Part shown: piece by piece, positions 7,740 through 51,439 of the stretch
How positions within the stretch are numbered: position 1 is the first letter of the stretch
Layout of the letters: every line of letters begins with the position of its first letter
From: Schmidtea nova
Lineage: Eukaryota
Reading direction: 5' to 3'
Length of the DNA stretch: 64,000 bases
Assembly: GCA_044892505.1 (NCBI GenBank)
Contig: CM097883.1
Span: 400,892,001-400,956,000, forward strand
The notes under the pieces: model-generated
Told to the model about the DNA's origin: nothing
Databases searched by the model: none
Seen by the model: the letters and a program-made list of their open reading frames with translations, nothing else
Position numbers and translations under genes: made by a program

Positions 7740-8530
7740 ACACAAAGCTGCAGCGCATCGACCCCCCGATAATTAAAATATACTTTATCACCTGAACATG
7801 GCAATAAACTTTGATGATCTTTCGGTACTGTTTAAAGAAATTGATTCACAGGATACTGACACTATATACTCCAACCTCGAGTATGCTGGTTTTGATCCTG
7901 TGAGAATGAGAGCCAGCATTTTCGAGAAGGGCGGTGGATCAACTAAATCAACTCTACTTGACATAATGAAGTTGCTGAGCATCTTCATTAAGAGAGGAAC
8001 TAGAATTGCTCAGATCAGGCAGAAGACAAATTCTGGAAAGTGGAAAGAATTTGCGGAATTGATTCAGAAATATGAGGTCAAGCAGAATTTGATTGCTGGT
8101 TCACCGCCTAATACAGTAACACTAGGCAGATTAGTTTCGAGCTTTCCAGAAATAACTGCCAAGCTATTACAGAAGTCTGGTTCTAGATTCAGAAGCTTAC
8201 ATGAGACTTTGCCGGATTGTCTTCATTTCACAGCTGCTGCCAGTTTGCTTCCGAGTGATCTGAAGGCTGGACATGATGAGCACCTCGAATTCTGTACAAC
8301 TCTCGATCTTCTTGTTAACTCAAATCCTGATGAGAGCAAAGTGAAACTCTACTTCAGGAAGAAGATCTTGCGTATTTCTATACCGAAGAGAGTAAAACTG
8401 CTTCATCACAACCTGGTACCAGCAAGAAAAGATCCAGTTCATCAAAGCTCACTCCTAGCAAGAGATCCAGAAAGTCTTAGATTTCATCAATGTTAGTTGT
8501 AATTTTCTAGATGTTGTAGATTTATTAAAT
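7740..8530 (+). other. Endogenous viral element: Phenuiviridae-like segment 5' terminus, UTR, N gene and short 3' UTR
   Basis: ACACAAAGCT at 7740-7749 lies 58 nt upstream of the N ATG. The region is visibly more GC-rich than its flanks. hAT sequence resumes at about 8531. Confidence 0.85.
7798..8480 (+). pseudogene. Phlebovirus/Tenuivirus-type nucleocapsid protein N (EVE), frameshifted near 8350
   Basis: Motifs collinear with phlebovirus N: LEYAGFDP (FAYQGFD), KRGTR (TRGNK), LIQKYEVK (LINKYKLK), VTLGRLVSSFP (LTLSRVAA). After VKLYF a shifted frame from 8355 reads QEEDLAYFYTEESKTASSQPGTSKKRSSSSKLTPSKRSRKS* (TAG 8478-8480). Confidence 0.85.
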
Positions 8531-8919: not shown

Positions 8920-9107
8920 GCTAAATCGGAGAGAAACTATATTTACTTGAACGTAGTTACAGGTCATTCGACCAGCAGCTTACATCGTGCGAGTTTTCCA
9001 TGAAGGAGTGAGTAGGAGAAAATTGTACTGCAGTTATTACGTAATAGAAATTAATAGTTACACTGTTACCACAGGCGACGCTAATCGGAGAAACAACTAA
9101 TGGATTT
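8920..9107 (+). repeat. ~188-bp dispersed repeat, also embedded in every spacer of the large array
   Basis: GCTAAATCGGAGAGAAACTA...CTAATGGATTT aligns by eye with 19105-19291 and equivalents, and best with the terminal spacer at ~50025-50213. Confidence 0.9.
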
Positions 9108-16898: not shown

Positions 16899-17531
16899 AT
16901 GTCGAAATATATTCCCCCTCATTTAAGAAATAAAATTGAAAAAGATGAAAAAGAATTACAAACGAATGTTGCTACAAAATATATTCCCCCTCATTTGAGA
17001 GGAAATGAATTTACGAAAAAATCAGTTATAAAAAGTACCGAAATAGAAAGTCAAAAGGTCGATAAAGACATATGGAAAGCATTTTCAAATTCAAATGCTT
17101 TCGAAAACTCGGTTGATAATTTGTTAGTGGAAATAAAAAATTTAAATTTATCCGATGAAGATATTAAATTATATAGTTATTTAGTCGAAATAAGTAATTT
17201 TGTCAAAACTTTTAAAACGATCGATATTGAAAGAATATTAGTAAAATATTCAGAAGATGGATTCGGTTTAAAGTGGATTAATAATGATTATTGTTTTGTT
17301 ATATTTTCTAATTCTCAAATTGCAAAAGAAGCTATTAATGATAGTCATTTGAAGGAATCATTTACCGTTAAAGGAATAAATGAAATATCGCAATATGGAA
17401 AAAATACAATTTTAAACTCGCCAGGTAGTTGGTTGCTGCCGTTTAAAAAAAGGCCCAAAGGATCTGTAGTAGCAGCTCAAAGAATGATTTATCATTCATT
17501 ACAAATTAATACAAAATCAGGAAAAAAATAA
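16899..17531 (+). CDS. R3HCC1/R3HCC1L-like protein (C-terminal RRM-like domain), 210 aa, intronless
   Basis: LVEISNFVKTFKTIDIERILVKYSEDGFGLKWINNDYCFVIFS and LLPFKKRPKGSVVAAQRMIYHSLQI align with R3HCC1L VIEIYDFPxEFxTEDL...GFDIKWVDDTHALGVFS and [25 protein letters not shown]. The ORF is intact and AATAAA overlaps the stop. Confidence 0.8.
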   Translation: MSKYIPPHLRNKIEKDEKELQTNVATKYIPPHLRGNEFTKKSVIKSTEIESQKVDKDIWKAFSNSNAFENSVDNLLVEIKNLNLSDEDIKLYSYLVEISNFVKTFKTIDIERILVKYSEDGFGLKWINNDYCFVIFSNSQIAKEAINDSHLKESFTVKGINEISQYGKNTILNSPGSWLLPFKKRPKGSVVAAQRMIYHSLQINTKSGKK

Positions 17532-18753
17532 AACATTTAAAATTGTTTTACGTCCTATTTATTGATAACTGATCTTTACAATAAAAAAATTTAACATGAA
17601 AAATTTTTTTTGTAAATTAACGTTTTGAATGTGAAATGTTTTATGAATAATATTAGTACAATATCTATATTTGAATTTATATTTCGTTTGCATAAATTTA
17701 TTGTAATAATTTTTAAATATTTTGCTACTTTTTTAAATTTTATGAATTAAGATTATTATTGTATATAGCAATACTGCAAGTAACTAAAACGGTTCATTTC
17801 ACTGTAAATTTGCAAATTTTTTTGTATTATATTGACACGAAACTTAGATTTAAAATTTCTTTTAGAATATAAAAAAATCTTTATCTTTACAATAATCAAA
17901 CTGATTTCCTGGAACGGCCAAAGTTGCTTAGAAAACTACATGTTTTCTCCTAACTATTTTGCACTGGAGTTTTGTCGTGTTATGTAAAAACGTTGAAATC
18001 AAATCTTAGGGTTCCCCCTATCACCCCTCCCTAAATCTGTTTTAGAAGCACGCCTTTATCGATATTTTAAATATATATGTAAAGTAAAGTATATATATGT
18101 AAAGTAAAGTAACCAACTGTCAAGTATTTGAACTTATAACAATACCCTCTAAATCGCGTTCCTCAAATTAAATTATTGAAATGATTCAACAAATCTTACG
18201 TTAAATGAGTTAAACATCTATGTCATGTCTTATATTTTGTTCTATGAATTCGTTATTCCCATTCTGAAGGTTTGTCAGTAATATTCACTTTAATTTTTCA
18301 TTAACAAATTATATATATATATATATAAATATCATTCTTACATCAAATGATTACATTGCAAGTATTTGATAAGTATGGCCTACAAATCTTACTTGTCCCT
18401 TTCCGACATACGCAAGTCAATGAATGTAACTTATTCATCGACTTCTTATTTATTTATTTTACAGGTTCGTGGAGAATATAACGTTTATACGTTAAATGAG
18501 TTAAACATCTATGTCATGTCTTATATTTTGTTCTATGAATTCGTTATTCCCATTCTGAAGGTTTGTCAGTAATATTCACTTTAATTTTTCATTAACAAAT
18601 TATATATATATATATAAATATCATTCTTACATCAAATGATTACATTGCAAGTATTTGATAAGTATGGCCTACAAATCTTACTTGACCCTTTCCGACATAT
18701 GCAAGTCAATGAATGTAACTTATTCATCGACTTCTTATTTATTTATTTTACAG

Positions 18754-18849
18754 GTTCGTGGAGAATATAACGTTTATACGTTAAATGAGTTAAACATCTA
18801 TGTCATGTCTTATATTTTGTTCTATGAATTCGTTATTCCCATTCTGAAG
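18754..18849 (+). other. Representative 96-nt exon-like cassette present in every monomer (V/IRGEYNVYTLNELNIYVMSYILFYEFVIPILK)
   Basis: Preceded by TTATTTATTTATTTTACAG and followed by GTTTGT after AAG. It is 32 codons, open only in phase 0. Confidence 0.55.
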
Positions 18850-18920
18850 GTTTGTCAGTAATATTCACTTTAATTTTTCATTAACAAATTACGTAAATTT
18901 CTAATGGTGTGAATCTCCAG

Positions 18921-18989
18921 CTAATGATTCCTCAGTGGTGTATTTCACCCTTTCCCATTGGCACGAAATTCAGAATGCCGCCGGTTTAT
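18921..18989 (+). other. Representative 69-nt exon-like cassette at the start of each spacer (LMIPQWCISPFPIGTKFRMPPVY)
   Basis: CAG acceptor at 18918-18920 and a perfect GTGAGT donor at 18990. It is 23 codons, open in phase 0, separated from the 96-nt cassette by a 71-nt GT-AG interval. Confidence 0.5.
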
Positions 18990-19250
18990 GTGAGTATTAT
19001 AATCTTTTGATTTTTATTATCTTACATAACATTCATCCCTTCTGGACAAGACCTTTTTTGAAAATAGCTCTTTTCGATATATTTTTATTTGCGTAATTTT
19101 ATGCGCTAAATCGGAGAAACTAAAATTTACTTGAACGTAGTTACAGGTCATTCGACCAGCATATCACATCGTGAGAGGTTTTCATGAAGGAGTGAGTAGG
19201 AGAAAATTGTACCGCAGTTATTACGTAATAGAAATTAATAGTTATACTGT

Positions 19251-19422
19251 TACCGCAGGCGACGCTAATCTGAGAAACGACTAATGGATTTTTAATAGAT
19301 ATTTTGACTATATGAGCTAAGGTGAGAGCGACAAATTACCGCAGGTGACGCTAATCTGAGAAACGACTAATGGATTTTTAATAGATATTTTGACTATATG
19401 AGCTAAGGTGAGAGCGACAAAT
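19251..19422 (+). repeat. 86-bp sub-repeat inside the spacer
   Basis: TACCGCAGG(C/T)GACGC...GCGACAAAT at 19251 and 19337. Two copies in spacers 1-9, four in spacer 10, three in spacer 11 and one in spacer 12. Confidence 0.95.
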
Positions 19423-22400
19423 TACAATAATACCAAATGAGTAATTGAATTTAGTGCCGATTAATGCTCACAGAGGAAATTTAGTGATAATGTAGTAGAG
19501 AGCTGAATCGAATTATTTGGTGAGGGAATATTTTTTGAAGGCATTAAGGTCCGGAAAATACTCAATAGTATAAAATTTTCAGAAATATGTCAGTGGCATG
19601 GGGATTAAATCCATTTACGATCAACGAGAGTTAATTAAGGATAATGGGAGTACGTGGGCTTAATTTACTTTTTTGTAAGAACGACGAGCGAATTCATTAA
19701 GAACGAGTTAAGGCACGACGCAGAGACAAGGTGGCCTACAAATCTTACTTGTCCCTTTCCGACATACGCAAGTCAATGAATGTAACTTATTCATCGACTT
19801 CTTATTTATTTATTTTACAGATTCGTGGAGAATATAATGTTTATACGTTAAATGAGTTAAACATCTATGTCATGTCTTATATTTTGTTCTATGAATTCGT
19901 TATTCCCATTCTGAAGGTTTGTCAGTAATATTCACTTTAATTTTTCATTAACAAATTATATATATATATAAATATCATTATTACATCAAATGATTACATT
20001 GCAAGTATTTGATAAGTATGGCCTACAAATCTTACTTGTCCCTTTCCGACATACGCAAGTCAATGAATGTAACTTATTCATCGACTTCTTATTTATTTAT
20101 TTTACAGATTCGTGGAGAATATAATGTTTATACGTTAAATGAATTAAACATCTATGTCATGTCTTATATTTTGTTCTATGAATTCGTTATTTCGATTCTG
20201 AAGGTTTGTCAGTAATATTCACTTTAATTTTTCATTAACAAATTATATATATAAATATCATTATTACATCAAATGATTACATTGCAAGTATTTGATAAGT
20301 ATGGCCTACAAATCTTACTTGTCCCTTTCCGACATACGCAAGTCAATGAATGTAACTTATTCATCGACTTCTTATTTATTTATTTTACAGATTCGTGGAG
20401 AATATAATGTTTATACGTTAAATGATTTAAACATCTATGTCATGTCTTATATTTTGTTCTATGAATTCGTTATTCCCATTCTGAAGGTTTGTCAGTAATA
20501 TTCACTTTAATTTTTCATTAACAAATTATATATATAAATATCATTATTACATCAAATGATTACATTGCAAGTATTTGATAAGTATGGCCTACAAATCTTA
20601 CTTGACCCTTTCCGACATATGCAAGTCAATGAATGTAACTTATTCATCGACTTCTTATTTATTTATTTTACAGATTCGTGGAGAATATAATGTTTATACG
20701 TTAAATGAATTAAACATCTATGTCATGTCTTATATTTTGTTCTATGAATTCGTTATTTCGATTCTGAAGGTTTGTCAGTAATATTCACTTTAATTTTTCA
20801 TTAACAAATTATATATATAAATATCATTATTACATCAAATGATTACATTGCAAGTATTTGATAAGTATGGCCTACAAATCTTACTTGTCCCTTTCCGACA
20901 TACGCAAGTCAATGAATGTAACTTATTCATCGACTTCTTATTTATTTATTTTACAGATTCGTGGAGAATATAATGTTTATACGTTAAATGAGTTAAACAT
21001 CTATGTCATGTCTTATATTTTGTTCTATGAATTCGTTATTCCCATTCTGAAGGTTTGTCAGTAATATTCACTTTAATTTTTCATTAACAAATTATATATA
21101 TAAATATCATTATTACATCAAATGATTACATTGCAAGTATTTGATAAGTATGGCCTACAAATCTTACTTGACCCTTTCCGACATATGCAAGTCAATGAAT
21201 GTAACTTATTCATCGACTTCTTATTTATTTATTTTACAGATTCGTGGAGAATATAATGTTTATACGTTAAATGAATTAAACATCTATGTCATGTCTTATA
21301 TTTTGTTCTATGAATTCGTTATTTCGATTCTGAAGGTTTGTCAGTAATATTCACTTTAATTTTTCATTAACAAATTATATATATAAATATCATTATTACA
21401 TCAAATGATTACATTGCAAGTATTTGATAAGTATGGCCTACAAATCTTACTTGTCCCTTTCCGACATACGCAAGTCAATGAATGTAACTTATTCATCGAC
21501 TTCTTATTTATTTATTTTACAGATTCGTGGAGAATATAATGTTTATACGTTAAATGAGTTAAACATCTATGTCATGTCTTATATTTTGTTCTATGAATTC
21601 GTTATTCCCATTCTGAAGGTTTGTCAGTAATATTCACTTTAATTTTTCATTAACAAATTATATATATATATATATAAATATCATTATTACATCAAATGAT
21701 TACATTGCAAGTATTTGATAAGTATGGCCTACAAATCTTACTTGTCCCTTTCCGACATACGCAAGTCAATGAATGTAACTTATTCATCGACTTCTTATTT
21801 ATTTATTTTACAGGTTCGTGGAGAATATAACGTTTATACGTTAAATGAGTTAAACATCTATGTCATGTCTTATATTTTGTTCTATGAATTCGTTATTCCC
21901 ATTCTGAAGGTTTGTCAGTAATATTCACTTTAATTTTTCATTAACAAATTATATATATATATATATAAATATCATTCTTACATCAAATGATTACATTGCA
22001 AGTATTTGATAAGTATGGCCTACAAATCTTACTTGACCCTTTCCGACATATGCAAGTCAATGAATGTAACTTATTCATCGACTTCTTATTTATTTATTTT
22101 ACAGGTTCGTGGAGAATATAACGTTTATACGTTAAATGAGTTAAACATCTATGTCATGTCTTATATTTTGTTCTATGAATTCGTTATTCCCATTCTGAAG
22201 GTTTGTCAGTAATATTCACTTTAATTTTTCATTAACAAATTACGTAAATTTCTAATGGTGTGAATCTCCAGCTAATGATTCCTCAGTGGTGTATTTCACC
22301 CTTTCCCATTGGCACGAAATTCAGAATGCCGCCGGTTTATGTGAGTATTATAATCTTTTGATTTTTATTATCTTACATAACATTCATCCCTTCTGGACAA

Positions 22401-25400
22401 GACCTTTTTTGAAAATAGCTCTTTTCGATATATTTTTATTTGCGTAATTTTATGCGCTAAATCGGAGAAACTAAAATTTACTTGAACGTAGTTACAGGTC
22501 ATTCGACCAGCATATCACATCGTGAGAGGTTTTCATGAAGGAGTGAGTAGGAGAAAATTGTACCGCAGTTATTACGTAATAGAAATTAATAGTTATACTG
22601 TTACCGCAGGCGACGCTAATCTGAGAAACGACTAATGGATTTTTAATAGATATTTTGACTATATGAGCTAAGGTGAGAGCGACAAATTACCGCAGGTGAC
22701 GCTAATCTGAGAAACGACTAATGGATTTTTAATAGATATTTTGACTATATGAGCTAAGGTGAGAGCGACAAATTACAATAATACCAAATGAGTAATTGAA
22801 TTTAGTGCCGATTAATGCTCACAGAGGAAATTTAGTGATAATGTAGTAGAGAGCTGAATCGAATTATTTGGTGAGGGAATATTTTTTGAAGGCATTAAGG
22901 TCCGGAAAATACTCAATAGTATAAATTTTCAGAAATATGTCAGTGGCATGGGGATTAAATCCATTTACGATCAACGAGAGTTAATTAAGGATAATGGGAG
23001 TACGTGGGCTTAATTTACTTTTTTGTAAGAACGACGAGCGAATTCATTAAGAACGAGTTAAGGCACGACGCAGAGACAAGGTGGCCTACAAATCTTACTT
23101 GTCCCTTTCCGACATACGCAAGTCAATGAATGTAACTTATTCATCGACTTCTTATTTATTTATTTTACAGATTCGTGGAGAATATAATGTTTATACGTTA
23201 AATGAGTTAAACATCTATGTCATGTCTTATATTTTGTTCTATGAATTCGTTATTCCCATTCTGAAGGTTTGTCAGTAATATTCACTTTAATTTTTCATTA
23301 ACAAATTATATATATATATAAATATCATTATTACATCAAATGATTACATTGCAAGTATATGATAAGTATGGCCTACAAATCTTACTTGTCCCTTTCCGAC
23401 ATACGCAAGTCAATGAATGTAACTTATTCATCGACTTCTTATTTATTTATTTTACAGATTCGTGGAGAATATAATGTTTATACGTTAAATGAATTAAACA
23501 TCTATGTCATGTCTTATATTTTGTTCTATGAATTCGTTATTTCGATTCTGAAGGTTTGTCAGTAATATTCACTTTAATTTTTCATTAACAAATTATATAT
23601 ATAAATATCATTATTACATCAAATGATTACATTGCAAGTATTTGATAAGTATGGCCTACAAATCTTACTTGTCCCTTTCCGACATACGCAAGTCAATGAA
23701 TGTAACTTATTCATCGACTTCTTATTTATTTATTTTACAGATTCGTGGAGAATATAATGTTTATACGTTAAATGAGTTAAACATCTATGTCATGTCTTAT
23801 ATTTTGTTCTATGAATTCGTTATTCCCATTCTGAAGGTTTGTCAGTAATATTCACTTTAATTTTTCATTAACAAATTATATATATAAATATCATTATTAC
23901 ATCAAATGATTACATTGCAAGTATTTGATAAGTATGGCCTACAAATCTTACTTGACCCTTTCCGACATATGCAAGTCAATGAATGTAACTTATTCATCGA
24001 CTTCTTATTTATTTATTTTACAGATTCGTGGAGAATATAATGTTTATACGTTAAATGAATTAAACATCTATGTCATGTCTTATATTTTGTTCTATGAATT
24101 CGTTATTTCGATTCTGAAGGTTTGTCAGTAATATTCACTTTAATTTTTCATTAACAAATTATATATATAAATATCATTATTACATCAAATGATTACATTG
24201 CAAGTATTTGATAAGTATGGCCTACAAATCTTACTTGTCCCTTTCCGACATACGCAAGTCAATGAATGTAACTTATTCATCGACTTCTTATTTATTTATT
24301 TTACAGATTCGTGGAGAATATAATGTTTATACGTTAAATGAGTTAAACATCTATGTCATGTCTTATATTTTGTTCTATGAATTCGTTATTCCCATTCTGA
24401 AGGTTTGTCAGTAATATTCACTTTAATTTTTCATTAACAAATTATATATATATATATATAAATATCATTATTACATCAAATGATTACATTGCAAGTATTT
24501 GATAAGTATGGCCTACAAATCTTACTTGTCCCTTTCCGACATACGCAAGTCAATGAATGTAACTTATTCATCGACTTCTTATTTATTTATTTTACAGGTT
24601 CGTGGAGAATATAACGTTTATACGTTAAATGAGTTAAACATCTATGTCATGTCTTATATTTTGTTCTATGAATTCGTTATTCCCATTCTGAAGGTTTGTC
24701 AGTAATATTCACTTTAATTTTTCATTAACAAATTATATATATATATATAAATATCATTCTTACATCAAATGATTACATTGCAAGTATTTGATAAGTATGG
24801 CCTACAAATCTTACTTGACCCTTTCCGACATATGCAAGTCAATGAATGTAACTTATTCATCGACTTCTTATTTATTTATTTTACAGGTTCGTGGAGAATA
24901 TAACGTTTATACGTTAAATGAGTTAAACATCTATGTCATGTCTTATATTTTGTTCTATGAATTCGTTATTCCCATTCTGAAGGTTTGTCAGTAATATTCA
25001 CTTTAATTTTTCATTAACAAATTACGTAAATTTCTAATGGTGTGAATCTCCAGCTAATGATTCCTCAGTGGTGTATTTCACCCTTTCCCATTGGCACGAA
25101 ATTCAGAATGCCGCCGGTTTATGTGAGTATTATAATCTTTTGATTTTTATTATCTTACATAACATTCATCCCTTCTGGACAAGACCTTTTTTGAAAATAG
25201 CTCTTTTCGATATATTTTTATTTGCGTAATTTTATGCGCTAAATCGGAGAAACTAAAATTTACTTGAACGTAGTTACAGGTCATTCGACCAGCATATCAC
25301 ATCGTGAGAGGTTTTCATGAAGGAGTGAGTAGGAGAAAATTGTACCGCAGTTATTACGTAATAGAAATTAATAGTTATACTGTTACCGCAGGCGACGCTA

Positions 25401-28400
25401 ATCTGAGAAACGACTAATGGATTTTTAATAGATATTTTGACTATATGAGCTAAGGTGAGAGCGACAAATTACCGCAGGTGACGCTAATCTGAGAAACGAC
25501 TAATGGATTTTTAATAGATATTTTGACTATATGAGCTAAGGTGAGAGCGACAAATTACAATAATACCAAATGAGTAATTGAATTTAGTGCCGATTAATGC
25601 TCACAGAGGAAATTTAGTGATAATGTAGTAGAGAGCTGAATCGAATTATTTGGTGAGGGAATATTTTTTGAAGGCATTAAGGTCCGGAAAATACTCAATA
25701 GTATAAAATTTTCAGAAATATGTCAGTGGCATGGGGATTAAATCCATTTACGATCAACGAGAGTTAATTAAGGATAATGGGAGTACGTGGGCTTAATTTA
25801 CTTTTTTGTAAGAACGACGAGCGAATTCATTAAGAACGAGTTAAGGCACGACGCAGAGACAAGGTGGCCTACAAATCTTACTTGTCCCTTTCCGACATAC
25901 GCAAGTCAATGAATGTAACTTATTCATCGACTTCTTATTTATTTATTTTACAGATTCGTGGAGAATATAATGTTTATACGTTAAATGAGTTAAACATCTA
26001 TGTCATGTCTTATATTTTGTTCTATGAATTCGTTATTCCCATTCTGAAGGTTTGTCAGTAATATTCACTTTAATTTTTCATTAACAAATTATATATATAT
26101 ATATAAATATCATTATTACATCAAATGATTACATTGCAAGTATTTGATAAGTATGGCCTACAAATCTTACTTGTCCCTTTCCGACATACGCAAGTCAATG
26201 AATGTAACTTATTCATCGACTTCTTATTTATTTATTTTACAGATTCGTGGAGAATATAATGTTTATACGTTAAATGAATTAAACATCTATGTCATGTCTT
26301 ATATTTTGTTCTATGAATTCGTTATTTCGATTCTGAAGGTTTGTCAGTAATATTCACTTTAATTTTTCATTAACAAATTATATATATAAATATCATTATT
26401 ACATCAAATGATTACATTGCAAGTATTTGATAAGTATGGCCTACAAATCTTACTTGTCCCTTTCCGACATACGCAAGTCAATGAATGTAACTTATTCATC
26501 GACTTCTTATTTATTTATTTTACAGATTCGTGGAGAATATAATGTTTATACGTTAAATGAGTTAAACATCTATGTCATGTCTTATATTTTGTTCTATGAA
26601 TTCGTTATTCCCATTCTGAAGGTTTGTCAGTAATATTCACTTTAATTTTTCATTAACAAATTATATATATAAATATCATTATTACATCAAATGATTACAT
26701 TGCAAGTATTTGATAAGTATGGCCTACAAATCTTACTTGACCCTTTCCGACATATGCAAGTCAATGAATGTAACTTATTCATCGACTTCTTATTTATTTA
26801 TTTTACAGATTCGTGGAGAATATAATGTTTATACGTTAAATGAATTAAACATCTATGTCATGTCTTATATTTTGTTCTATGAATTCGTTATTTCGATTCT
26901 GAAGGTTTGTCAGTAATATTCACTTTAATTTTTCATTAACAAATTATATATATAAATATCATTATTACATCAAATGATTACATTGCAAGTATTTGATAAG
27001 TATGGCCTACAAATCTTACTTGTCCCTTTCCGACATACGCAAGTCAATGAATGTAACTTATTCATCGACTTCTTATTTATTTATTTTACAGATTCGTGGA
27101 GAATATAATGTTTATACGTTAAATGAGTTAAACATCTATGTCATGTCTTATATTTTGTTCTATGAATTCGTTATTCCCATTCTGAAGGTTTGTCAGTAAT
27201 ATTCACTTTAATTTTTCATTAACAAATTATATATATATATATATATATATAAATATCATTATTACATCAAATGATTACATTGCAAGTATTTGATAAGTAT
27301 GGCCTACAAATCTTACTTGTCCCTTTCCGACATACGCAAGTCAATGAATGTAACTTATTCATCGACTTCTTATTTATTTATTTTACAGGTTCGTGGAGAA
27401 TATAACGTTTATACGTTAAATGAGTTAAACATCTATGTCATGTCTTATATTTTGTTCTATGAATTCGTTATTCCCATTCTGAAGGTTTGTCAGTAATATT
27501 CACTTTAATTTTTCATTAACAAATTATATATATATATATAAATATCATTCTTACATCAAATGATTACATTGCAAGTATTTGATAAGTATGGCCTACAAAT
27601 CTTACTTGACCCTTTCCGACATATGCAAGTCAATGAATGTAACTTATTCATCGACTTCTTATTTATTTATTTTACAGGTTCGTGGAGAATATAACGTTTA
27701 TACGTTAAATGAGTTAAACATCTATGTCATGTCTTATATTTTGTTCTATGAATTCGTTATTCCCATTCTGAAGGTTTGTCAGTAATATTCACTTTAATTT
27801 TTCATTAACAAATTACGTAAATTTCTAATGGTGTGAATCTCCAGCTAATGATTCCTCAGTGGTGTATTTCACCCTTTCCCATTGGCACGAAATTCAGAAT
27901 GCCGCCGGTTTATGTGAGTATTATAATCTTTTGATTTTTATTATCTTACATAACATTCATCCCTTCTGGACAAGACCTTTTTTGAAAATAGCTATTTTCG
28001 ATATATTTTTATTTGCGTAATTTTATGCGCTAAATCGGAGAAACTAAAATTTACTTGAACGTAGTTACAGGTCATTCGACCAGCATATCACATCGTGAGA
28101 GGTTTTCATGAAGGAGTGAGTAGGAGAAAATTGTACCGCAGTTATTACGTAATAGAAATTAATAGTTATACTGTTACCGCAGGCGACGCTAATCTGAGAA
28201 ACGACTAATGGATTTTTAATAGATATTTTGACTATATGAGCTAAGGTGAGAGCGACAAATTACCGCAGGTGACGCTAATCTGAGAAACGACTAATGGATT
28301 TTTAATAGATATTTTGACTATATGAGCTAAGGTGAGAGCGACAAATTACAATAATACCAAATGAGTAATTGAATTTAGTGCCGATTAATGCTCACAGAGG

Positions 28401-40400: not shown

Positions 40401-43400
40401 CTTTCCGACATACGCAAGTCAATGAATGTAACTTATTCATCGACTTCTTATTTATTTATTTTACAGATTCGTGGAGAATATAATGTTTATACGTTAAATG
40501 AGTTAAACATCTATGTCATGTCTTATATTTTGTTCTATGAATTCGTTATTCCCATTCTGAAGGTTTGTCAGTAATATTCACTTTAATTTTTCATTAACAA
40601 ATTATATATATAAATATCATTATTACATCAAATGATTACATTGCAAGTATTTGATAAGTATGGCCTACAAATCTTACTTGACCCTTTCCGACATATGCAA
40701 GTCAATGAATGTAACTTATTCATCGACTTCTTATTTATTTATTTTACAGATTCGTGGAGAATATAATGTTTATACGTTAAATGAATTAAACATCTATGTC
40801 ATGTCTTATATTTTGTTCTATGAATTCGTTATTTCGATTCTGAAGGTTTGTCAGTAATATTCACTTTAATTTTTCATTAACAAATTATATATATAAATAT
40901 CATTATTACATCAAATGATTACATTGCAAGTATTTGATAAGTATGGCCTACAAATCTTACTTGTCCCTTTCCGACATACGCAAGTCAATGAATGTAACTT
41001 ATTCATCGACTTCTTATTTATTTATTTTACAGATTCGTGGAGAATATAATGTTTATACGTTAAATGAGTTAAACATCTATGTCATGTCTTATATTTTGTT
41101 CTATGAATTCGTTATTCCCATTCTGAAGGTTTGTCAGTAATATTCACTTTAATTTTTCATTAACAAATTATATATATATATATATATATATAAATATCAT
41201 TATTACATCAAATGATTACATTGCAAGTATTTGATAAGTATGGCCTACAAATCTTACTTGTCCCTTTCCGACATACGCAAGTCAATGAATGTAACTTATT
41301 CATCGACTTCTTATTTATTTATTTTACAGGTTAGTGGAGAATATAACGTTTATACGTTAAATGAGTTAAACATCTATGTCATGTCTTATATTTTGTTCTA
41401 TGAATTCGTTATTCCCATTCTGAAGGTTTGTCAGTAATATTCACTTTAATTTTTCATTAACAAATTATATATATATATATAAATATCATTCTTACATCAA
41501 ATGATTACATTGCAAGTATTTGATAAGTATGGCCTACAAATCTTACTTGACCCTTTCCGACATATGCAAGTCAATGAATGTAACTTATTCATCGACTTCT
41601 TATTTATTTATTTTACAGGTTCGTGGAGAATATAACGTTTATACGTTAAATGAGTTAAACATCTATGTCATGTCTTATATTTTGTTCTATGAATTCGTTA
41701 TTCCCATTCTGAAGGTTTGTCAGTAATATTCACTTTAATTTTTCATTAACAAATTACGTAAATTTCTAATGGTGTGAATCTCCAGCTAATGATTCCTCAG
41801 TGGTGTATTTCACCCTTTCCCATTGGCACGAAATTCAGAATGCCGCCGGTTTATGTGAGTATTATAATCTTTTGATTTTTATTATCTTACATAACATTCA
41901 TCCCTTCTGGACAAGACCTTTTTTGAAAATAGCTATTTTCGATATATTTTTATTTGCGTAATTTTATGCGCTAAATCGGAGAAACTAAAATTTACTTGAA
42001 CGTAGTTACAGGTCATTCGACCAGCATATCACATCGTGAGAGGTTTTCATGAAGGAGTGAGTAGGAGAAAATTGTACCGCAGTTATTACGTAATAGAAAT
42101 TAATAGTTATACTGTTACCGCAGGCGACGCTAATCTGAGAAACGACTAATGGATTTTTAATAGATATTTTGACTATATGAGCTAAGGTGAGAGCGACAAA
42201 TTACCGCAGGTGACGCTAATCTGAGAAACGACTAATGGATTTTTAATAGATATTTTGACTATATGAGCTAAGGTGAGAGCGACAAATTACAATAATACCA
42301 AATGAGTAATTGAATTTAGTGCCGATTAATGCTCACAGAGGAAATTTAGTGATAATGTAGTAGAGAGCTGAATCGAATTATTTGGTGAGGGAATATTTTT
42401 TGAAGGCATTAAGGTCCGGAAAATACTCAATAGTATAAAATTTTCAGAAATATGTCAGTGGCATGGGGATTAAATCCATTTACGATCAACGAGAGTTAAT
42501 TAAGGATAATGGGAGTACGTGGGCTTAATTTACTTTTTTGTAAGAACGACGAGCGAATTCATTAAGAACGAGTTAAGGCACGACGCAGAGACAAGGTGGC
42601 CTACAAATCTTACTTGTCCCTTTCCGACATACGCAAGTCAATGAATGTAACTTATTCATCGACTTCTTATTTATTTATTTTACAGATTCGTGGAGAATAT
42701 AATGTTTATACGTTAAATGAGTTAAACATCTATGTCATGTCTTATATTTTGTTCTATGAATTCGTTATTCCCATTCTGAAGGTTTGTCAGTAATATTCAC
42801 TTTAATTTTTCATTAACAAATTATATATAAATATCATTATTACATCAAATGATTACATTGCAAGTATTTGATAAGTATGGCCTACAAATCTTACTTGTCC
42901 CTTTCCGACATATGCAAGTCAATGAATGTAACTTATTCATCGACTTCTTATTTATTAATTTTACAGATTCGTGGAGAATATAATGTTTATACGTTAAATG
43001 AGTTAAACATCTATGTCATGTCTTATATTTTGTTCTATGAATTCGTTATTCCCATTCTGAAGGTTTGTCAGTAATATTCACTTTAATTTTTCATTAACAA
43101 TTTATATATATATATAAATTTCATTCTTACATCAAATGATTACATTGCAAGTATTTGATAAGTATGGCCTACAAATCTTACTTGTCCCTTTCCGACATAT
43201 GCAAGTCAATGAATGTAACTTATTCATCGACTTCTTATTTATTTATTTTACAGATTCGTGGAGAATATAATGTTTATACGTTAAATGAGTTAAACATCTA
43301 TGTCATGTCTTATATTTTGTTCTATGAATTCGTTATTTCGATTCTGAAGGTTTGTCAGTAATATTCACTTTAATTTTTCATTAACAAATTATATATATAA

Positions 43401-46400
43401 ATATCATTATTACATCAAATGATTACATTGCAAGTATTTGATAAGTATGGCCTACAAATCTTACTTGTCCCTTTCCGACATACGCAAGTCAATGAATGTA
43501 ACTTATTCATCGACTTCTTATTTATTTATTTTACAGATTCGTGGAGAATATAATGTTTATACGTTAAATGAGTTAAACATCTATGTCATGTCTTATATTT
43601 TGTTCTATGAATTCGTTATTCCCATTCTGAAGGTTTGTCAGTAATATTCACTTTAATTTTTCATTAACAAATTATATATATATATATATATATATAAATA
43701 TCATTATTACATCAAATGATTACATTGCAAGTATTTGATAAGTATGGCCTACAAATCTTACTTGTCCCTTTCCGACATACGCAAGTCAATGAATGTAACT
43801 TATTCATCGACTTCTTATTTATTTATTTTACAGGTTCGTGGAGAATATAACGTTTATACGTTAAATGAGTTAAACATCTATGTCATGTCTTATATTTTGT
43901 TCTATGAATTCGTTATTCCCATTCTGAAGGTTTGTCAGTAATATTCACTTTAATTTTTCATTAACAAATTATATATATATATATATAAATATCATTCTTA
44001 CATCAAATGATTACATTGCAAGTATTTGATAAGTATGGCCTACAAATCTTACTTGACCCTTTCCGACATATGCAAGTCAATGAATGTAACTTATTCATCG
44101 ACTTCTTATTTATTTATTTTACAGGTTCGTGGAGAATATAACGTTTATACGTTAAATGAGTTAAACATCTATGTCATGTCTTATATTTTGTTCTATGAAT
44201 TCGTTATTCCCATTCTGAAGGTTTGTCAGTAATATTCACTTTAATTTTTCATTAACAAATTACGTAAATTTCTAATGGTGTGAATCTCCAGCTAATGATT
44301 CCTCAGTGGTGTATTTCACCCTTTCCCATTGGCACGAAATTCAGAATGCCGCCGGTTTATGTGAGTATTATAATCTTTTGATTTTTATTATCTTACATAA
44401 CATTCATCCCTTCTGGACAAGACCTTTTTTGAAAATAGCTCTTTTCGATATATTTTTATTTGCGTAATTTTATGCGCTAAATCGGAGAAACTAAAATTTA
44501 CTTGAACGTAGTTACAGGTCATTCGACCAGCATATCACATCGTGAGAGGTTTTCATGAAGGAGTGAGTAGGAGAAAATTGTACCGCAGTTATTACGTAAT
44601 AGAAATTAATAGTTATACTGTTACCGCAGGCGACGCTAATCTGAGAAACGACTAATGGATTTTTAATAGATATTTTGACTATATGAGCTAAGGTGAGAGC
44701 GACAAATTACCGCAGGCGACGCTAATCTGAGAAACGACTAATGGATTTTTAATAGATATTTTGACTATATGAGCTAAGGTGAGAGCGACAAATTACCGCA
44801 GGTGACGCTAATCTGAGAAACGACTAATGGATTTTTAATAGATATTTTGACTATATGAGCTAAGGTGAGAGCGACAAATTACCGCAGGTGACGCTAATCT
44901 GAGAAACGACTAATGGATTTTTAATAGATATTTTGACTATATGAGCTAAGGTGAGAGCGACAAATTACAATAATACCAAATGAGTAATTGAATTTAGTGC
45001 CGATTAATGCTCACAGAGGAAATTTAGTGATAATGTAGTAGAGAGCTGAATCGAATTATTTGGTGAGGGAATATTTTTTGAAGGCATTAAGGTCCGGAAA
45101 ATACTCAATAGTATAAAATTTTCAGAAATATGTCAGTGGCATGGGGATTAAATCCATTTACGATCAACGAGAGTTAATTAAGGATAATGGGAGTACGTGG
45201 GCTTAATTTACTTTTTTGTAAGAACGACGAGCGAATTCATTAAGAACGAGTTAAGGCACGACGCAGAGACAAGGTGGCCTACAAATCTTACTTGTCCCTT
45301 TCCGACATACGCAAGTCAATGAATGTAACTTATTCATCGACTTCTTATTTATTTATTTTACAGATTCGTGGAGAATATAATGTTTATACGTTAAATGAGT
45401 TAAACATCTATGTCATGTCTTATATTTTGTTCTATGAATTCGTTATTCCCATTCTGAAGGTTTGTCAGTAATATTCACTTTAATTTTTCATTAACAAATT
45501 ATATATATATATAAATATCATTATTACATCAAATGATTACATTGCAAGTATTTGATAAGTATGGCCTACAAATCTTACTTGTCCCTTTCCGACATACGCA
45601 AGTCAATGAATGTAACTTATTCATCGACTTCTTATTTATTTATTTTACAGATTCGTGGAGAATATAATGTTTATACGTTAAATGAGTTAAACATCTATGT
45701 CATGTCTTATATTTTGTTCTATGAATTCGTTATTCCCATTCTGAAGGTTTGTCAGTAATATTCACTTTAATTTTTCATTAACAAATTATATATATAAATA
45801 TCATTATTACATCAAATGATTACATTGCAAGTATTTGATAAGTATGGCCTACAAATCTTACTTGACCCTTTCCGACATATGCAAGTCAATGAATGTAACT
45901 TATTCATCGACTTCTTATTTATTTATTTTACAGATTCGTGGAGAATATAATGTTTATACGTTAAATGAATTAAACATCTATGTCATGTCTTATATTTTGT
46001 TCTATGAATTCGTTATTTCGATTCTGAAGGTTTGTCAGTAATATTCACTTTAATTTTTCATTAACAAATTATATATATAAATATCATTATTACATCAAAT
46101 GATTACATTGCAAGTATTTGATAAGTATGGCCTACAAATCTTACTTGTCCCTTTCCGACATACGCAAGTCAATGAATGTAACTTATTCATCGACTTCTTA
46201 TTTATTTATTTTACAGATTCGTGGAGAATATAATGTTTATACGTTAAATGAGTTAAACATCTATGTCATGTCTTATATTTTGTTCTATGAATTCGTTATT
46301 CCCATTCTGAAGGTTTGTCAGTAATATTCACTTTAATTTTTCATTAACAAATTATATATATATATATATATATAAATATCATTATTACATCAAATGATTA

Positions 46401-49400
46401 CATTGCAAGTATTTGATAAGTATGGCCTACAAATCTTACTTGTCCCTTTCCGACATACGCAAGTCAATGAATGTAACTTATTCATCGACTTCTTATTTAT
46501 TTATTTTACAGGTTCGTGGAGAATATAACGTTTATACGTTAAATGAGTTAAACATCTATGTCATGTCTTATATTTTGTTCTATGAATTCGTTATTCCCAT
46601 TCTGAAGGTTTGTCAGTAATATTCACTTTAATTTTTCATTAACAATTTATATATATATATAAATTTCATTCTTACATCAAATGATTACATTGCAAGTATT
46701 TGATAAGTATGGCCTACAAATCTTACTTGTCCCTTTCCGACATATGCAAGTCAATGAATGTAACTTATTCATCGACTTCTTATTTATTTATTTTACAGAT
46801 TCGTGGAGAATATAATGTTTATACGTTAAATGAGTTAAACATCTATGTCATGTCTTATATTTTGTTCTATGAATTCGTTATTCCCATTCTGAAGGTTTGT
46901 CAGTAATATTCACTTTAATTTTTCATTAACAAATTATATATATAAATATCATTATTACATCAAATGATTACATTGCAAGTATTTGATAAGTATGGCCTAC
47001 AAATCTTACTTGACCCTTTCCGACATATGCAAGTCAATGAATGTAACTTATTCATCGACTTCTTATTTATTTATTTTACAGATTCGTGGAGAATATAATG
47101 TTTATACGTTAAATGAATTAAACATCTATGTCATGTCTTATATTTTGTTCTATGAATTCGTTATTTCGATTCTGAAGGTTTGTCAGTAATATTCACTTTA
47201 ATTTTTCATTAACAAATTATATATATAAATATCATTATTACATCAAATGATTACATTGCAAGTATTTGATAAGTATGGCCTACAAATCTTACTTGTCCCT
47301 TTCCGACATACGCAAGTCAATGAATGTAACTTATTCATCGACTTCTTATTTATTTATTTTACAGATTCGTGGAGAATATAATGTTTATACGTTAAATGAG
47401 TTAAACATCTATGTCATGTCTTATATTTTGTTCTATGAATTCGTTATTCCCATTCTGAAGGTTTGTCAGTAATATTCACTTTAATTTTTCATTAACAAAT
47501 TATATATATATATATATATATAAATATCATTATTACATCAAATGATTACATTGCAAGTATTTGATAAGTATGGCCTACAAATCTTACTTGTCCCTTTCCG
47601 ACATACGCAAGTCAATGAATGTAACTTATTCATCGACTTCTTATTTATTTATTTTACAGGTTCGTGGAGAATATAACGTTTATACGTTAAATGAGTTAAA
47701 CATCTATGTCATGTCTTATATTTTGTTCTATGAATTCGTTATTCCCATTCTGAAGGTTTGTCAGTAATATTCACTTTAATTTTTCATTAACAAATTATAT
47801 ATATATATATATAAATATCATTCTTACATCAAATGATTACATTGCAAGTATTTGATAAGTATGGCCTACAAATCTTACTTGACCCTTTCCGACATATGCA
47901 AGTCAATGAATGTAACTTATTCATCGACTTCTTATTTATTTATTTTACAGGTTCGTGGAGAATATAACGTTTATACGTTAAATGAGTTAAACATCTATGT
48001 CATGTCTTATATTTTGTTCTATGAATTCGTTATTCCCATTCTGAAGGTTTGTCAGTAATATTCACTTTAATTTTTCATTAACAAATTACGTAAATTTCTA
48101 ATGGTGTGAATCTCCAGCTAATGATTCCTCAGTGGTGTATTTCACCCTTTCCCATTGGCACGAAATTCAGAATGCCGCCGGTTTATGTGAGTATTATAAT
48201 CTTTTGATTTTTATTATCTTACATAACATTCATCCCTTCTGGACAAGACCTTTTTTGAAAATAGCTCTTTTCGATATATTTTTATTTGCGTAATTTTATG
48301 CGCTAAATCGGAGAAACTAAAATTTACTTGAACGTAGTTACAGGTCATTCGACCAGCATATCACATCGTGAGAGGTTTTCATGAAGGAGTGAGTAGGAGA
48401 AAATTGTACCGCAGTTATTACGTAATAGAAATTAATAGTTATACTGTTACCGCAGGCGACGCTAATCTGAGAAACGACTAATGGATTTTTAATAGATATT
48501 TTGACTATATGAGCTAAGGTGAGAGCGACAAATTACCGCAGGCGACGCTAATCTGAGAAACGACTAATGGATTTTTAATAGATATTTTGACTATATGAGC
48601 TAAGGTGAGAGCGACAAATTACCGCAGGTGACGCTAATCTGAGAAACGACTAATGGATTTTTAATAGATATTTTGACTATATGAGCTAAGGTGAGAGCGA
48701 CAAATTACAATAATACCAAATGAGTAATTGAATTTAGTGCCGATTAATGCTCACAGAGGAAATTTAGTGATAATGTAGTAGAGAGCTGAATCGAATTATT
48801 TGGTGAGGGAATATTTTTTGAAGGCATTAAGGTCCGGAAAATACTCAATAGTATAAAATTTTCAGAAATATGTCAGTGGCATGGGGATTAAATCCATTTA
48901 CGATCAACGAGAGTTAATTAAGGATAATGGGAGTACGTGGGCTTAATTTACTTTTTTGTAAGAACGACGAGCGAATTCATTAAGAACGAGTTAAGGCACG
49001 ACGCAGAGACAAGGTGGCCTACAAATCTTACTTGTCCCTTTCCGACATACGCAAGTCAATGAATGTAACTTATTCATCGACTTCTTATTTATTTATTTTA
49101 CAGATTCGTGGAGAATATAATGTTTATACGTTAAATGAGTTAAACATCTATGTCATGTCTTATATTTTGTTCTATGAATTCGTTATTCCCATTCTGAAGG
49201 TTTGTCAGTAATATTCACTTTAATTTTTCATTAACAAATTATATATATATATAAATATCATTATTACATCAAATGATTACATTGCAAGTATTTGATAAGT
49301 ATGGCCTACAAATCTTACTTGTCCCTTTCCGACATACGCAAGTCAATGAATGTAACTTATTCATCGACTTCTTATTTATTTATTTTACAGATTCGTGGAG

Positions 49401-51439
49401 AATATAATGTTTATACGTTAAATGAGTTAAACATCTATGTCATGTCTTATATTTTGTTCTATGAATTCGTTATTCCCATTCTGAAGGTTTGTCAGTAATA
49501 TTCACTTTAATTTTTCATTAACAAATTATATATATAAATATCATTATTACATCAAATGATTACATTGCAAGTATTTGATAAGTATGGCCTACAAATCTTA
49601 CTTGTCCCTTTCCGACATATGCAAGTCAATGAATGTAACTTATTCATCGACTTCTTATTTATTAATTTTACAGATTCGTGGAGAATATAATGTTTATACG
49701 TTAAATGAGTTAAACATCTATGTCATGTCTTATATTTTGTTCTATGAATTCGTTATTCCCATTCTGAAGGTTTGTCAGTAATATTCACTTTAATTTTTCA
49801 TTAACAAATTACGTAAATTTCTACTGGTGTGAATCTCCAGCTAATGATTCCTCAGTGGTGTATTTCACCCTTTCCCATTGGCACGAATTTCAGAATGCCG
49901 CCGGTTTATGTGAGTATTATAATCTTTTGATTTTTATTATCTTACATAACAGTCATCCCTTCTGGATAAGACTTTTTTTGAAAATAGCTCTTTTCGATAT
50001 ATTTTTATTTGCGTAATTTTATGCGATAAATCGGAGAGAAACTAAAATTTACCTGAACGTAGTTACAGGTCATTCGACCAGCATATCACAACGTGAGAGG
50101 TTTTCATGAAGGAGTGAGTAGGAGAAAATTGTACCGCAGTTATTACGTAATAGAAATTAATAGTTATACTGTTACCGCAGGCGACGCTAATCGGAGAAAC
50201 GACTAATGGATTTTTAATAGATATTTTGACTATATGAGCTGAGGTGAGAGCGACAAATTACAATAATACCAAGTGAGTAATTGAATTTAGTGCCGATTAA
50301 TGCTCACAGAGGAAATTTAGTGATAATGTAGTAGAGAGATAAATCGAATTATTTGGTGAGGGAATATTTTTTGAAGGCATTAGTAAATGCATTAAGGTCC
50401 GGAAAATACCCAATAGTATAAAATTTTCAGAAATATGTCAGTGGCATGGGGATTAAATCCATTTACGATCAACGAGAGTTAATTAAGGATAATGGGAGTA
50501 CGTGGGCTTAATTTACTTTTTTGTAAGAACGACGAGCGAATTCATTAAGAACGAGTTAAGGCACGACGCAGAGACAAGGTGGACCCGAGTGGCCGATAGA
50601 TCTGAAGTGCGAGTACCCAGTGGATACGCCACGATATTTTGTTGAATCGCCCAGCGAGATTCCGACCATGGATATTATTCAACATTGCGGAATCGTATTC
50701 GAAATACCAACCAGTCCTCCTATGACCGACCCCTCAGCCCAACCGAATCCTATTAGTGTACAGAACTCAATAAAATTAATTAATAACAATACCATGTAAA
50801 TCGCCTTCCTCCAATTAAATTATTGAAATGATTCTATTCAATATAATTATATATTCTCTATATAAATATCATTCTTACATCAAATGATTACATTGCAAGT
50901 ATTTGATAAGTATGGCCTACAAATCTTACTTGTCCTTTTCCGACATACGCAAGTCAATGAATGTAACTTATTCATCGACTTCTTATTTATTTATTTTACA
51001 GATTCGTGGAGAATATAATGTTTATACGTTAAATGAGTTAAACATCTATGTCATGTCTTATATTTTGTTCTATTAACTTTACAAATTAAAAAAATATATT
51101 TGCTAAAATTTCTTCTTAGAAACAACAAGTATAGTTTGCCTTCAAGAATATTTTGATAGCATAGTCTGCAAAGCCAGACAGCCTATTTTATAGTGTTGCA
51201 ACTTGAGTGGCGAGCAGCGACTTGTCCGTCATACGACTCAATTATTTAGTCAGTTATTCTAGGCGAGTATTACAAAATTTTTGGAATAAAATTTTTTTAA
51301 TTTATTTAATAAATAAACATAACATATGCATGGGTAAATGTAACACTTGTTTTGATAGTCTAAAATTAACTATGATACAAGTAGGTGTGTACATCTACGT
51401 GTTACTCATAGTTAGTTTGTTGAAATTATTCATTTTGAT

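What the first reader, a model, noticed from the sequence alone, without database searches (positions are those of the whole stretch)
18636..49900. Array of 79 in-phase exon cassettes: a satellite built from an exon-intron-exon gene fragment that could splice into one giant repetitive ORF
Seen: every monomer has TTTTACAG|96 nt, open|GTTTGT. Every spacer begins with CAG|69 nt, open|GTGAGT after a 71-nt GT-AG interval. A weaker upstream 69-nt segment (ATG 18636 to CAA|GTCAAT) is also phase 0, giving MITLQVFDKYGLQILLxPFRHxQ-(V/I)RGEY...PILK-LMIPQW...PPVY. All cassettes are phase 0 and stop-free, so any chain stays in frame (79x32 + 12x23 = about 2,800 aa). Inference: either a dead satellite born from a host gene fragment, or a massive tandem-exon cassette (Dscam-like or repeat-protein) system. 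Copies are too similar for the lack of stops to prove selection, and I could not identify the parent protein.
Basis: partly seen in the sequence, partly recalled or inferred. Interest (0 to 1): 0.8.

Follow-up and report, generated by a model that had tools for sequence, protein, structure and literature searches.

The report
Young higher-order satellite with chance exon look
The 32-kb array is real, but it is a very young, single-locus tandem repeat built by nested duplications of non-coding DNA; its 79 "exons" are in effect one exon-like stretch copied many times, and nothing shows that it codes for a protein.

Summary

The array (window 18197-50582, 32.4 kb) is a higher-order repeat: about 7 monomers of 283 bp in a fixed order, plus an 856-bp spacer. 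These 2.79-kb units differ by only 0-2 bases, so the missing stops carry no information: 8 independent changes, 0.3-0.55 stops expected.

- **Breakpoints:** they ignore the "exons". Monomers join at a (TA)n microsatellite, units join inside the upstream 69-nt segment, and both array edges cut the 96-nt segment.
- **Spacer:** about three quarters of it is a non-coding dispersed-repeat fragment.
- **Other copies:** the 1.25-Gb genome has only two, in unrelated contexts. One is frameshifted. In the other the "exon" diverged more (10.4%) than the "introns" (6-7%).
- **Homology:** no Pfam, Rfam or Atlas match, and none among 1.84 billion proteins.
- **Chance:** about 1.7% of 303-bp flanking windows hold an equally good pseudo-exon.
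- **Copy number:** DNA-read depth agrees with the assembly.
- **RNA:** no runs were available, so splicing was not tested.

Earlier notes of this scan report real repeated-exon genes with known domains elsewhere in this (flatworm) genome; this array has no such domain.

The parts
18136..18187 (+). Left copy of the 'flank A' sequence that precedes the unit in the single-copy relatives. It is 92% identical to 50783-50834.
18197..18891 (+). Left edge of the array: a monomer truncated at nt 25 of the 96-nt segment, followed by two full monomers (types A and B).
18892..19104 (+). First part of the spacer. It continues the ancestral unit (collinear with L011 and L012) and holds the 69-nt open segment 18921-18989 with its CAG and GTGAGT borders.
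19105..19734 (+). Second part of the spacer: a fragment of a low-copy, non-coding dispersed repeat (65-79% to C1:71.137 Mb and C3:146.708 Mb; 92% to window 8920-9107). It carries an internal 86-bp tandem repeat (19250-19425) present in 2, 3 or 4 copies in different units.
19735..50582 (+). Body of the higher-order array: 11 blocks between spacers (3351, 2782, 2791, 2781, 2787, 2793, 2787, 2793, 2506, 3826, 1723 bp). The canonical monomer order is C-D-C-F-C-A-B plus the spacer. The unit junction is ...GGTGG|CCTAC..., inside the upstream 69-nt segment.
19732..20014 (+). Reference 283-bp monomer. Monomer length varies from 281 to 297 bp through the (TA)n microsatellite at the monomer junction.
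19821..19916 (+). Example of the 96-nt stop-free segment (32 codons) between TTTTACAG and GTTTGT. It lies inside a 73-75-codon open frame that also runs through the proposed upstream intron.
50583..50780 (+). Continuation of the dispersed repeat beyond the point where the higher-order unit junction was made. It occurs only at the right end.
50781..51076 (+). Right copy of flank A plus a terminal monomer that breaks off at nt 72 of the 96-nt segment and runs into unrelated DNA with an in-frame stop.

Best explanation
This is a young, locus-specific higher-order tandem repeat: satellite-like DNA with no coding role. Its history can be read from the junctions.

1. The starting material was a low-copy, non-coding unit of about 0.6-0.8 kb. 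It survives as single copies at C2:435.67 Mb and C2:401.27 Mb.
2. A 283-bp piece of it was duplicated head to tail by slippage or unequal exchange at a TA-rich microsatellite.
3. A fragment of a dispersed repeat came to lie 225 bp downstream.
4. A second duplication, joined at a 2-3-nt microhomology (TGG) between that fragment and the inside of a monomer, created a 2.79-kb unit of about 7 monomers plus spacer.
5. Unequal sister-chromatid or homologue exchange then multiplied this unit about 11 times. Most recently it was copied as a 5.6-kb pair of units.

The 96-nt and 69-nt open segments with AG/GT borders were features of the single ancestral unit, either by chance or as a relic, and were copied passively.

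What is shown: the structure, the junctions, the near-identity of units, the lack of homologs, the lack of exon-specific conservation, and the copy number in reads. What is inferred: the order of events, the recombination mechanisms, and the absence of function.
For: - **Repeat structure:** TRF periods of 283 and 86 bp with the pattern recurring about every 2.79 kb. Monomer variants are position-specific, C-D-C-F-C-A-B, in 7 of 11 blocks, and two alternating unit types recur twice.
- **Youth:** units differ by 0-2 substitutions in 2.79 kb, and two units are identical.
- **Little independent variation:** only 13 variable columns in 231. 7 of 96 lie in the 'exon' and 6 of 135 outside it.
- **Monomer junction:** the linker is (TA)n. 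L012 shows the same microsatellite with an incipient partial duplication.
- **Unit junction and edges:** both cut the proposed exons.
- **Rest of the genome:** the monomer occurs only at the array and two other loci. The spacer is composite, and its larger part is a dispersed repeat without ORFs.
- **Divergence against L011:** 'exon' 10.4%, 'introns' 6.1% and 7.0%.
- **L012 copy:** it has a 5-bp deletion and a stop.
- **Homology:** nothing in Pfam, Rfam or the Atlas, nothing among 1.84e9 proteins, and no peptide relatives in the own genome at E<=10.
- **Chance rate:** matched pseudo-exons occur in 1.65% of flanking 303-bp windows.
- **Read depth:** contig depths in four tagmentation DNA runs are flank about 9-14, spacer about 120-160 and monomer 250-750. 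This fits 12 spacers and 79 monomers, and the right-end junction is reproduced.
Against: - No RNA data could be laid on the array, so transcription and splicing are untested.
- Two neighbouring open, phase-0 segments with plausible splice borders is rarer than one: roughly 1e-3 per locus, by multiplying the rates.
- Synonymous changes are somewhat in excess in the proposed frame: 8 S to 8 N in the array plus L011, and 9 to 15 with L012, against a neutral expectation of 20-28% S. The other two frames give 5:16 and 2:16.
- The L011 copy keeps both segments open.
- Earlier notes of this scan report real repeated-exon genes elsewhere in this genome.
Confidence: 0.8

Rival explanations
1. Dead satellite born from a real gene fragment. 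The ancestral 0.6-0.8-kb unit was once an exon-intron-exon piece of a lineage-specific gene that has since been lost or is unrecognisable. The array is its non-functional amplification.
For: There are two adjacent phase-0 open segments with a T-rich acceptor and a GTGAGT donor. Both are open in L011. Synonymous changes are in mild excess in the proposed frame only. The 69-nt segment is the least diverged part: 2/69 against L011.
Against: - No homolog in the own genome beyond the three loci or in 1.84e9 proteins, and no Pfam hit.
- The three copies sit in unrelated contexts with no shared neighbouring exons.
- The 96-nt segment diverged faster than its 'introns'.
- The 45 bp after the 69-nt segment are just as conserved as the segment itself, so the low divergence there is not exon-shaped.
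- The frame also stays open through the proposed intron, as a 73-codon ORF.
- The synonymous excess is not significant once a transition bias is allowed.
Confidence: 0.13
2. Functional tandem-exon gene. The 96-nt cassettes (with the 69-nt ones) are spliced into one giant repeat protein, or used as alternative cassettes as in Dscam.
For: All cassettes are open and phase 0. Real repeated-exon genes are reported by other notes for this genome (not tested here).
Against: - Near-identity of the copies makes the openness uninformative.
- The breakpoints cut exons.
- There is no domain and no homolog.
- The donor GTTTGT departs from the usual GTRAGT at +3 and +4 (own knowledge of metazoan splice consensus; not scored here).
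- Each 32-residue unit would carry a 17-residue hydrophobic stretch, giving 79 membrane-like segments in a row.
- No terminal exon is identifiable.
- Neither the exon-versus-intron divergence nor the broken L012 copy points to selection.
Confidence: 0.04
3. Assembly artefact: a shorter repeat expanded or collapsed by the assembler.
For: Near-identical 2.79-kb units are hard to assemble. Two units are base-for-base identical.
Against: The contig depth ratios (flank about 10, spacer about 120-160, monomer 250-750) match the assembled copy numbers in four runs from two samples. The right-end junction contig is recovered as well. The runs may come from the same strain as the assembly, so the support is not fully independent.
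Confidence: 0.03

Closest known systems
Higher-order-repeat satellites (for example primate alpha satellite)
   Same: Monomers fall into position-specific variants that form a larger unit. These units are far more alike (99.9-100%) than the monomers within one unit (about 97%). Growth by unequal exchange is inferred. General descriptions appear in papers listed (PMC4131833, PMC8122249), of which only titles and abstracts were read.
   Different: It is a single 32-kb euchromatin-like locus beside ordinary genes, not a megabase centromeric array. The unit contains an 856-bp non-satellite spacer. The monomer family has only three loci in the genome. No centromere role is suggested.
Macrosatellites, and satellites seeded by transposon or dispersed-repeat fragments
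   Same: It is a kilobase-scale unit that includes a piece of a dispersed repeat and a nested internal minisatellite (86 bp, 2-4 copies). Origin of tandem arrays from repeat-derived sequences is described in PMC7004042 (abstract only).
   Different: The core monomer is not recognisably transposon-derived: no ORF and no terminal inverted repeats. No conserved ORF like that of D4Z4/DUX4 is present.
Stellate / Su(Ste)-type arrays of Drosophila: gene-derived tandem repeats with a transposon insertion (own knowledge)
   Same: It would be analogous if the unit really came from a gene fragment: a tandem array mixing exon-like sequence with a repeat fragment.
   Different: No parent gene is identifiable here. 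There are no small-RNA or expression data.
Tandem-exon genes: Dscam cassette clusters and giant repeat-protein genes such as the plakin-repeat and Ig-exon arrays noted elsewhere in this genome
   Same: A periodic AG|open, phase-0|GT pattern inside what looks like satellite DNA.
   Different: Those exons encode recognisable domains and are reported as old. Here there is no domain, no homolog and no exon-specific conservation, and the duplication breakpoints fall inside the 'exons'.

Membership tests
Higher-order tandem repeat (satellite-like DNA) | Head-to-tail monomers of constant period | tested here: met
   283-bp period, 79 monomers, 95-99% matches
Higher-order tandem repeat (satellite-like DNA) | Position-specific monomer variants, with units more alike than the monomers within one unit | tested here: met
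   Order C-D-C-F-C-A-B recurs. Units differ by 0-2 of 2.79 kb, against up to 6 differences per 231 bp between monomer types.
Higher-order tandem repeat (satellite-like DNA) | High genomic abundance or multiple arrays, as in classical satellites | tested here: not met
   There is one array and two single copies in 1.25 Gb. It is a single-locus array, better called a macrosatellite-like repeat than a genome-wide satellite.
Higher-order tandem repeat (satellite-like DNA) | Copy number real in the organism's DNA | tested here: met
   The depth ratios of contigs in four DNA runs fit 12 spacers and 79 monomers.
Tandem-exon (cassette or giant repeat-protein) gene | Transcription and splicing at the proposed borders | not testable with these tools
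   No RNA run holds the stretch. The four holders are tagmentation DNA libraries.
Tandem-exon (cassette or giant repeat-protein) gene | Exons more conserved than introns, with a synonymous excess | tested here: not met
   Against L011 the 'exon' diverged 10.4% and the 'introns' 6-7%. S:N is 9:15, not significantly different from the neutral expectation.
Tandem-exon (cassette or giant repeat-protein) gene | Encoded unit related to a protein domain or to any known or predicted protein | tested here: not met
   Pfam none. 0 hits among 1.84e9 proteins. Atlas none. Nothing in the own genome beyond the three loci. Searched exon by exon only.
Tandem-exon (cassette or giant repeat-protein) gene | Duplication units respect exon boundaries | tested here: not met
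   The unit junction lies inside the upstream 69-nt segment. The array edges lie at nt 25 and nt 72 of the 96-nt segment.
Transposable-element-derived array | Core monomer related to a multi-copy element with coding capacity or terminal repeats | tested here: not met
   The monomer unit occurs at three loci only. No terminal inverted repeats. Only the spacer's 630-bp part belongs to a dispersed repeat, and that repeat has few copies and no ORF.

The most novel reading that the evidence does not exclude
The array is a newborn gene. A non-coding unit that happened to carry splice-like borders and open phase-0 segments was amplified into 79 cassettes. These are transcribed and spliced into a roughly 2,800-residue repeat protein with no relatives anywhere, which would be de novo birth of a giant repeat protein from satellite DNA in a flatworm.
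Probability: 0.03. Interest if true: 0.85.

Novelty: new member of a known kind. Interest (0 to 1): 0.15.

Why it matters
As it stands, this is an ordinary single-locus tandem repeat. Its value is as a clean worked example. The junctions are still readable, so the steps can be traced: monomer duplication at a TA microsatellite, capture of a dispersed-repeat fragment, microhomology-joined formation of a higher-order unit, and then duplication of unit pairs.

It is also a caution for this genome, where real repeated-exon genes are reported. A periodic AG|open|GT pattern in near-identical repeats counts as one observation, not 79, and it needs homology, exon-shaped conservation or RNA evidence before it is called a gene.

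Tried and rejected
1. **RNA evidence.** The single run search returned only four runs of unknown kind. Their Nextera adaptor ends and even intergenic coverage mark them as DNA, and they show no spliced joints, so expression stays untested.
2. **Parent gene in the own genome.** Six-frame searches with the 32-aa and 23-aa segments at E<=10 found only the array, L011 and L012.
3. **Parent protein elsewhere.**
   - Pfam gave only a 13.7-bit sub-threshold POLR3C_WHD match.
   - The exhaustive HMMER search used the 73-aa ORF that contains the 32-aa segment, and found 0 hits.
   - The ESM Atlas gave no usable hit.
   - This lowers sensitivity for distant relatives.
4. **Non-coding RNA.** Rfam at E<=1 found nothing. 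The best-conserved 161 nt fold no better than shuffles, with z of -1.8 and -0.6.
5. **Transposon reading of the core unit.** No terminal inverted repeats. No ORFs in the dispersed-repeat relative L013, and no nucleocapsid gene next to it.
6. **Shared gene context.** The ORF blocks around L012 have no counterpart in the window or in L011.
7. **Neighbouring ORF 16899-17528 as a possible first exon.** It has no relatives and no similarity to the array.
8. **Organism.** It was not identified by my own tests. The Shal exon is only 66-70% identical to named proteins of many invertebrate phyla. 'Flatworm' comes from earlier notes.
9. **Masked stretches.** The N runs at 61959-62105 and 62208-62517 were left untouched.
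Full report
**Observation**

The pattern is in the sequence exactly as described.
- A regular-expression scan finds 79 copies of TTTTACAG followed by 96 stop-free bases and GTTTGT. They give five peptide variants, with I or V as first residue (36 IRGEY…PILK, 21 VRGEY…PILK, 19 …VISILK, and three rare ones).
- There are 12 copies of CAG | 69 open bases | GTGAGT, each 71 nt after a 96-nt segment, and 69 copies of the ATG-started 69-nt segment followed by GTCAAT.
- Tandem Repeats Finder reports a 283-bp period, a nested 86-bp period, and a recurrence about every 2.79 kb.

**Anatomy**

This gives a fixed order, C-D-C-F-C-A-B, followed by an 856-bp spacer. The order is kept in 7 of the 11 blocks. 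The other blocks are 9-, 6-, 10- and 3-monomer variants.

Seven canonical 2.79-kb units were aligned.
- They differ by 0-2 substitutions, except one unit with 10-12.
- Units 6 and 8 are identical, and units 5 and 7 differ by two bases.
- Two unit types alternate twice, so the latest step copied a 5.6-kb pair of units.

Monomer length varies from 281 to 297 bp through a (TA)n tract at the monomer junction. The 86-bp repeat in the spacer is present 2, 3 or 4 times.

The junctions are as follows.
- **Unit junction:** it reads …GACAAGGTGG|CCTACAAATC… The left side continues at the right end of the array as …GGTGGACCCGAG… The right side is the inside of the upstream 69-nt segment (…AAGTATGGCCTAC…). 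The two were joined at a 2-3-nt microhomology. A read contig shows the same alternative continuation.
- **Left edge:** it starts at nt 25 of the 96-nt segment.
- **Right terminal monomer:** it stops at nt 72 and runs into unrelated DNA with a stop.

So every class of breakpoint ignores the proposed exon borders.

**Origin of the parts**

In the 1.25-Gb assembly (three chromosomes of 612, 456 and 161 Mb), the monomer occurs only in this array and at two other places, both on the opposite strand.
- C2:435.67 Mb (L011) is 93% identical.
- C2:401.27 Mb (L012) is 85-89% identical and lies 0.3 Mb from the window.

In L011 a short 5' flank, one monomer and the first 225 bp of the spacer are collinear as single-copy sequence. 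L012 has the monomer and about 155 bp of the spacer, with (TA)n and a partial extra copy of the monomer start at its 5' side. L011 and L012 share a further 260 bp that the window lacks.

The remaining 630 bp of the spacer, plus 50583-50780, belong to a different sequence. It is a low-copy dispersed repeat, 65-79% identical to C1:71.137 Mb and C3:146.708 Mb, and 92% identical to window 8920-9107. It has no ORFs.

L012 carries the same TA microsatellite with a partial extra copy of the monomer start. This shows the kind of slippage that can start such an array.

**Is there a coding signal?**

1. *Lack of stops.* Within the array only 13 of 231 aligned columns vary: 7 of 96 in the "exon" and 6 of 135 outside it. 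That amounts to eight independent changes in the 96-nt segment. With 3.5-6.9% of random substitutions creating a stop, 0.3-0.55 stops are expected. Seeing none is the expected result.
2. *Exon versus intron.* Against L011 the 96-nt segment differs at 10.4% of sites. The 49- and 71-nt "introns" differ at 6.1% and 7.0%, and the 69-nt segments at 2.9% and 4.3%. The 45 bp after the second 69-nt segment are unchanged in all three loci, so the low divergence there is not exon-shaped.
3. *Integrity.* L012 has a 5-bp deletion in the 96-nt segment, a 1-bp deletion in the upstream 69-nt segment, and an in-frame stop.
4. *Synonymous versus non-synonymous changes.* The proposed frame gives 4:4 within the array, 4:4 against L011 and 1:9 against L012. 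That is 9:15:0 (S:N:stop) over 24 distinct changes. The other frames give 5:16:0 and 2:16:3. The neutral expectation is 20-28% synonymous, so p is 0.04-0.27 depending on transition bias. Leaving out L012 gives 8:8, for which my own estimate, not computed in a call, is p about 0.03-0.05. This is a hint at most, and it was noticed after the frame had been chosen.
5. *Frame through the intron.* The same frame is open for 73-75 codons, running through the proposed upstream intron. The open stretch therefore does not coincide with the proposed exon.
6. *Chance.* Of 303-bp windows in the flanking DNA, 43% contain some AG|≥96 nt open, divisible by 3|GT segment. 1.65% contain one that meets the monomer's own quality (YAG after at least 7/10 pyrimidines, GTNNG donor), and 5.5% do so at a minimum of 69 nt. 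The product of the two rates, about 1e-3 per locus, still predicts thousands of such pairs in 1.25 Gb.

**Homology**

All searches were done exon by exon, by reference.
- Pfam gave nothing above noise.
- Six-frame search of the own genome at E≤10 found only the three loci.
- The exhaustive HMMER search used the 73-aa ORF that contains the 32-aa segment. It found no protein at E≤0.001 among 1.84 billion representatives.
- The ESM Atlas gave no usable hit.
- Rfam found no RNA family, and the best-conserved 161 nt do not fold better than shuffles.

A 32-residue query can only detect fairly close relatives, so this absence is weaker than it would be for a full domain.

**Context**

The three copies share no neighbours.
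- L012 lies between ORF blocks of a minus-strand gene with a weak CREPT-like match.
- L011 lies beside a high-copy repeat.
- The window copy lies downstream of a 210-aa ORF with no relatives.

This is how a dispersed low-copy segment behaves. Exons of paralogous genes would be expected to share neighbouring exons.

**Is the array real?**

Four public runs (two samples, one study) hold the stretch. Their loose ends are Nextera adaptors and they cover the intergenic flank, so they are DNA libraries. Contig depths are about 9-14 on the unique flank, about 120-160 on the spacer, and 250-750 on monomer pieces. This fits 12 spacers and 79 monomers split into variants. The right-end junction is also recovered. 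Contig depth is a rough measure and the samples may be the assembly's own strain. No run on record as RNA holds the stretch, so transcription and splicing could not be tested.

**Verdict**

This is a young, single-locus higher-order tandem repeat made by nested duplications of non-coding DNA (confidence 0.8).
- The "79 in-phase exon cassettes" are one exon-like stretch copied passively.
- A relic of a lost lineage-specific gene cannot be excluded (0.13).
- A working tandem-exon gene is unlikely (0.04).
- An assembly artefact is unlikely (0.03).

Earlier notes of this scan call the genome a flatworm and describe other satellite-like arrays in it that follow-ups read as real repeated-exon genes with plakin or Ig-like domains. 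I did not test those. This array differs in lacking any domain, any homolog and any exon-shaped conservation.

Noticed in passing
window 1736-4562: A second young tandem repeat. The period is 534 bp, with three copies at 2196-3663, two of them 100% identical, and a further 234-bp piece at 4329-4562. A 186-bp x 2 repeat lies at 1736-2107. Recent tandem duplication seems common in this region.
   Followed up: partly
window 88-1227 (-): A large exon of a Shal (Kv4) voltage-gated K+ channel, with BTB_2 and Ion_trans domains. It is only 66-70% identical to named proteins from many invertebrate phyla, and 94% to one unnamed Logan protein.
   Followed up: partly
window 7798-8493 (+) and 8920-9107: A 232-aa ORF with a Tenui_N (phlebovirus/tenuivirus nucleocapsid) match, as earlier notes said. 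Directly after it lies a 188-bp piece that is 92% identical to the dispersed-repeat part of the array spacer. The longest relative of that repeat, L013, has no nucleocapsid gene. Observed only.
   Followed up: partly
window 16899-17528 (+): A 210-aa ORF just upstream of the array with the motif KYIPPHLR twice and a sub-threshold NCBP3 match (20.6 bits against a cut-off of 28.9). The word search found no relatives.
   Followed up: partly
L012 6210-8660 and 8733-9584 (C2:401.27 Mb): A 2.4-kb AT-rich trinucleotide microsatellite that reads as an 806-codon poly-Ile ORF. It lies next to ORF blocks of a minus-strand gene with a weak CREPT-like match. The degenerate copy of the array's unit lies between these blocks.
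   Followed up: no
L011 4300-4465 (C2:435.67 Mb): A roughly 165-bp high-copy element (2,258 first-look candidates, 91-96% identical copies on all three chromosomes) abuts the single-copy relative of the unit. It is probably a SINE- or MITE-like repeat.
   Followed up: no
window 61959-62105 and 62208-62517: Two runs of N (147 and 310 bases).
   Followed up: no
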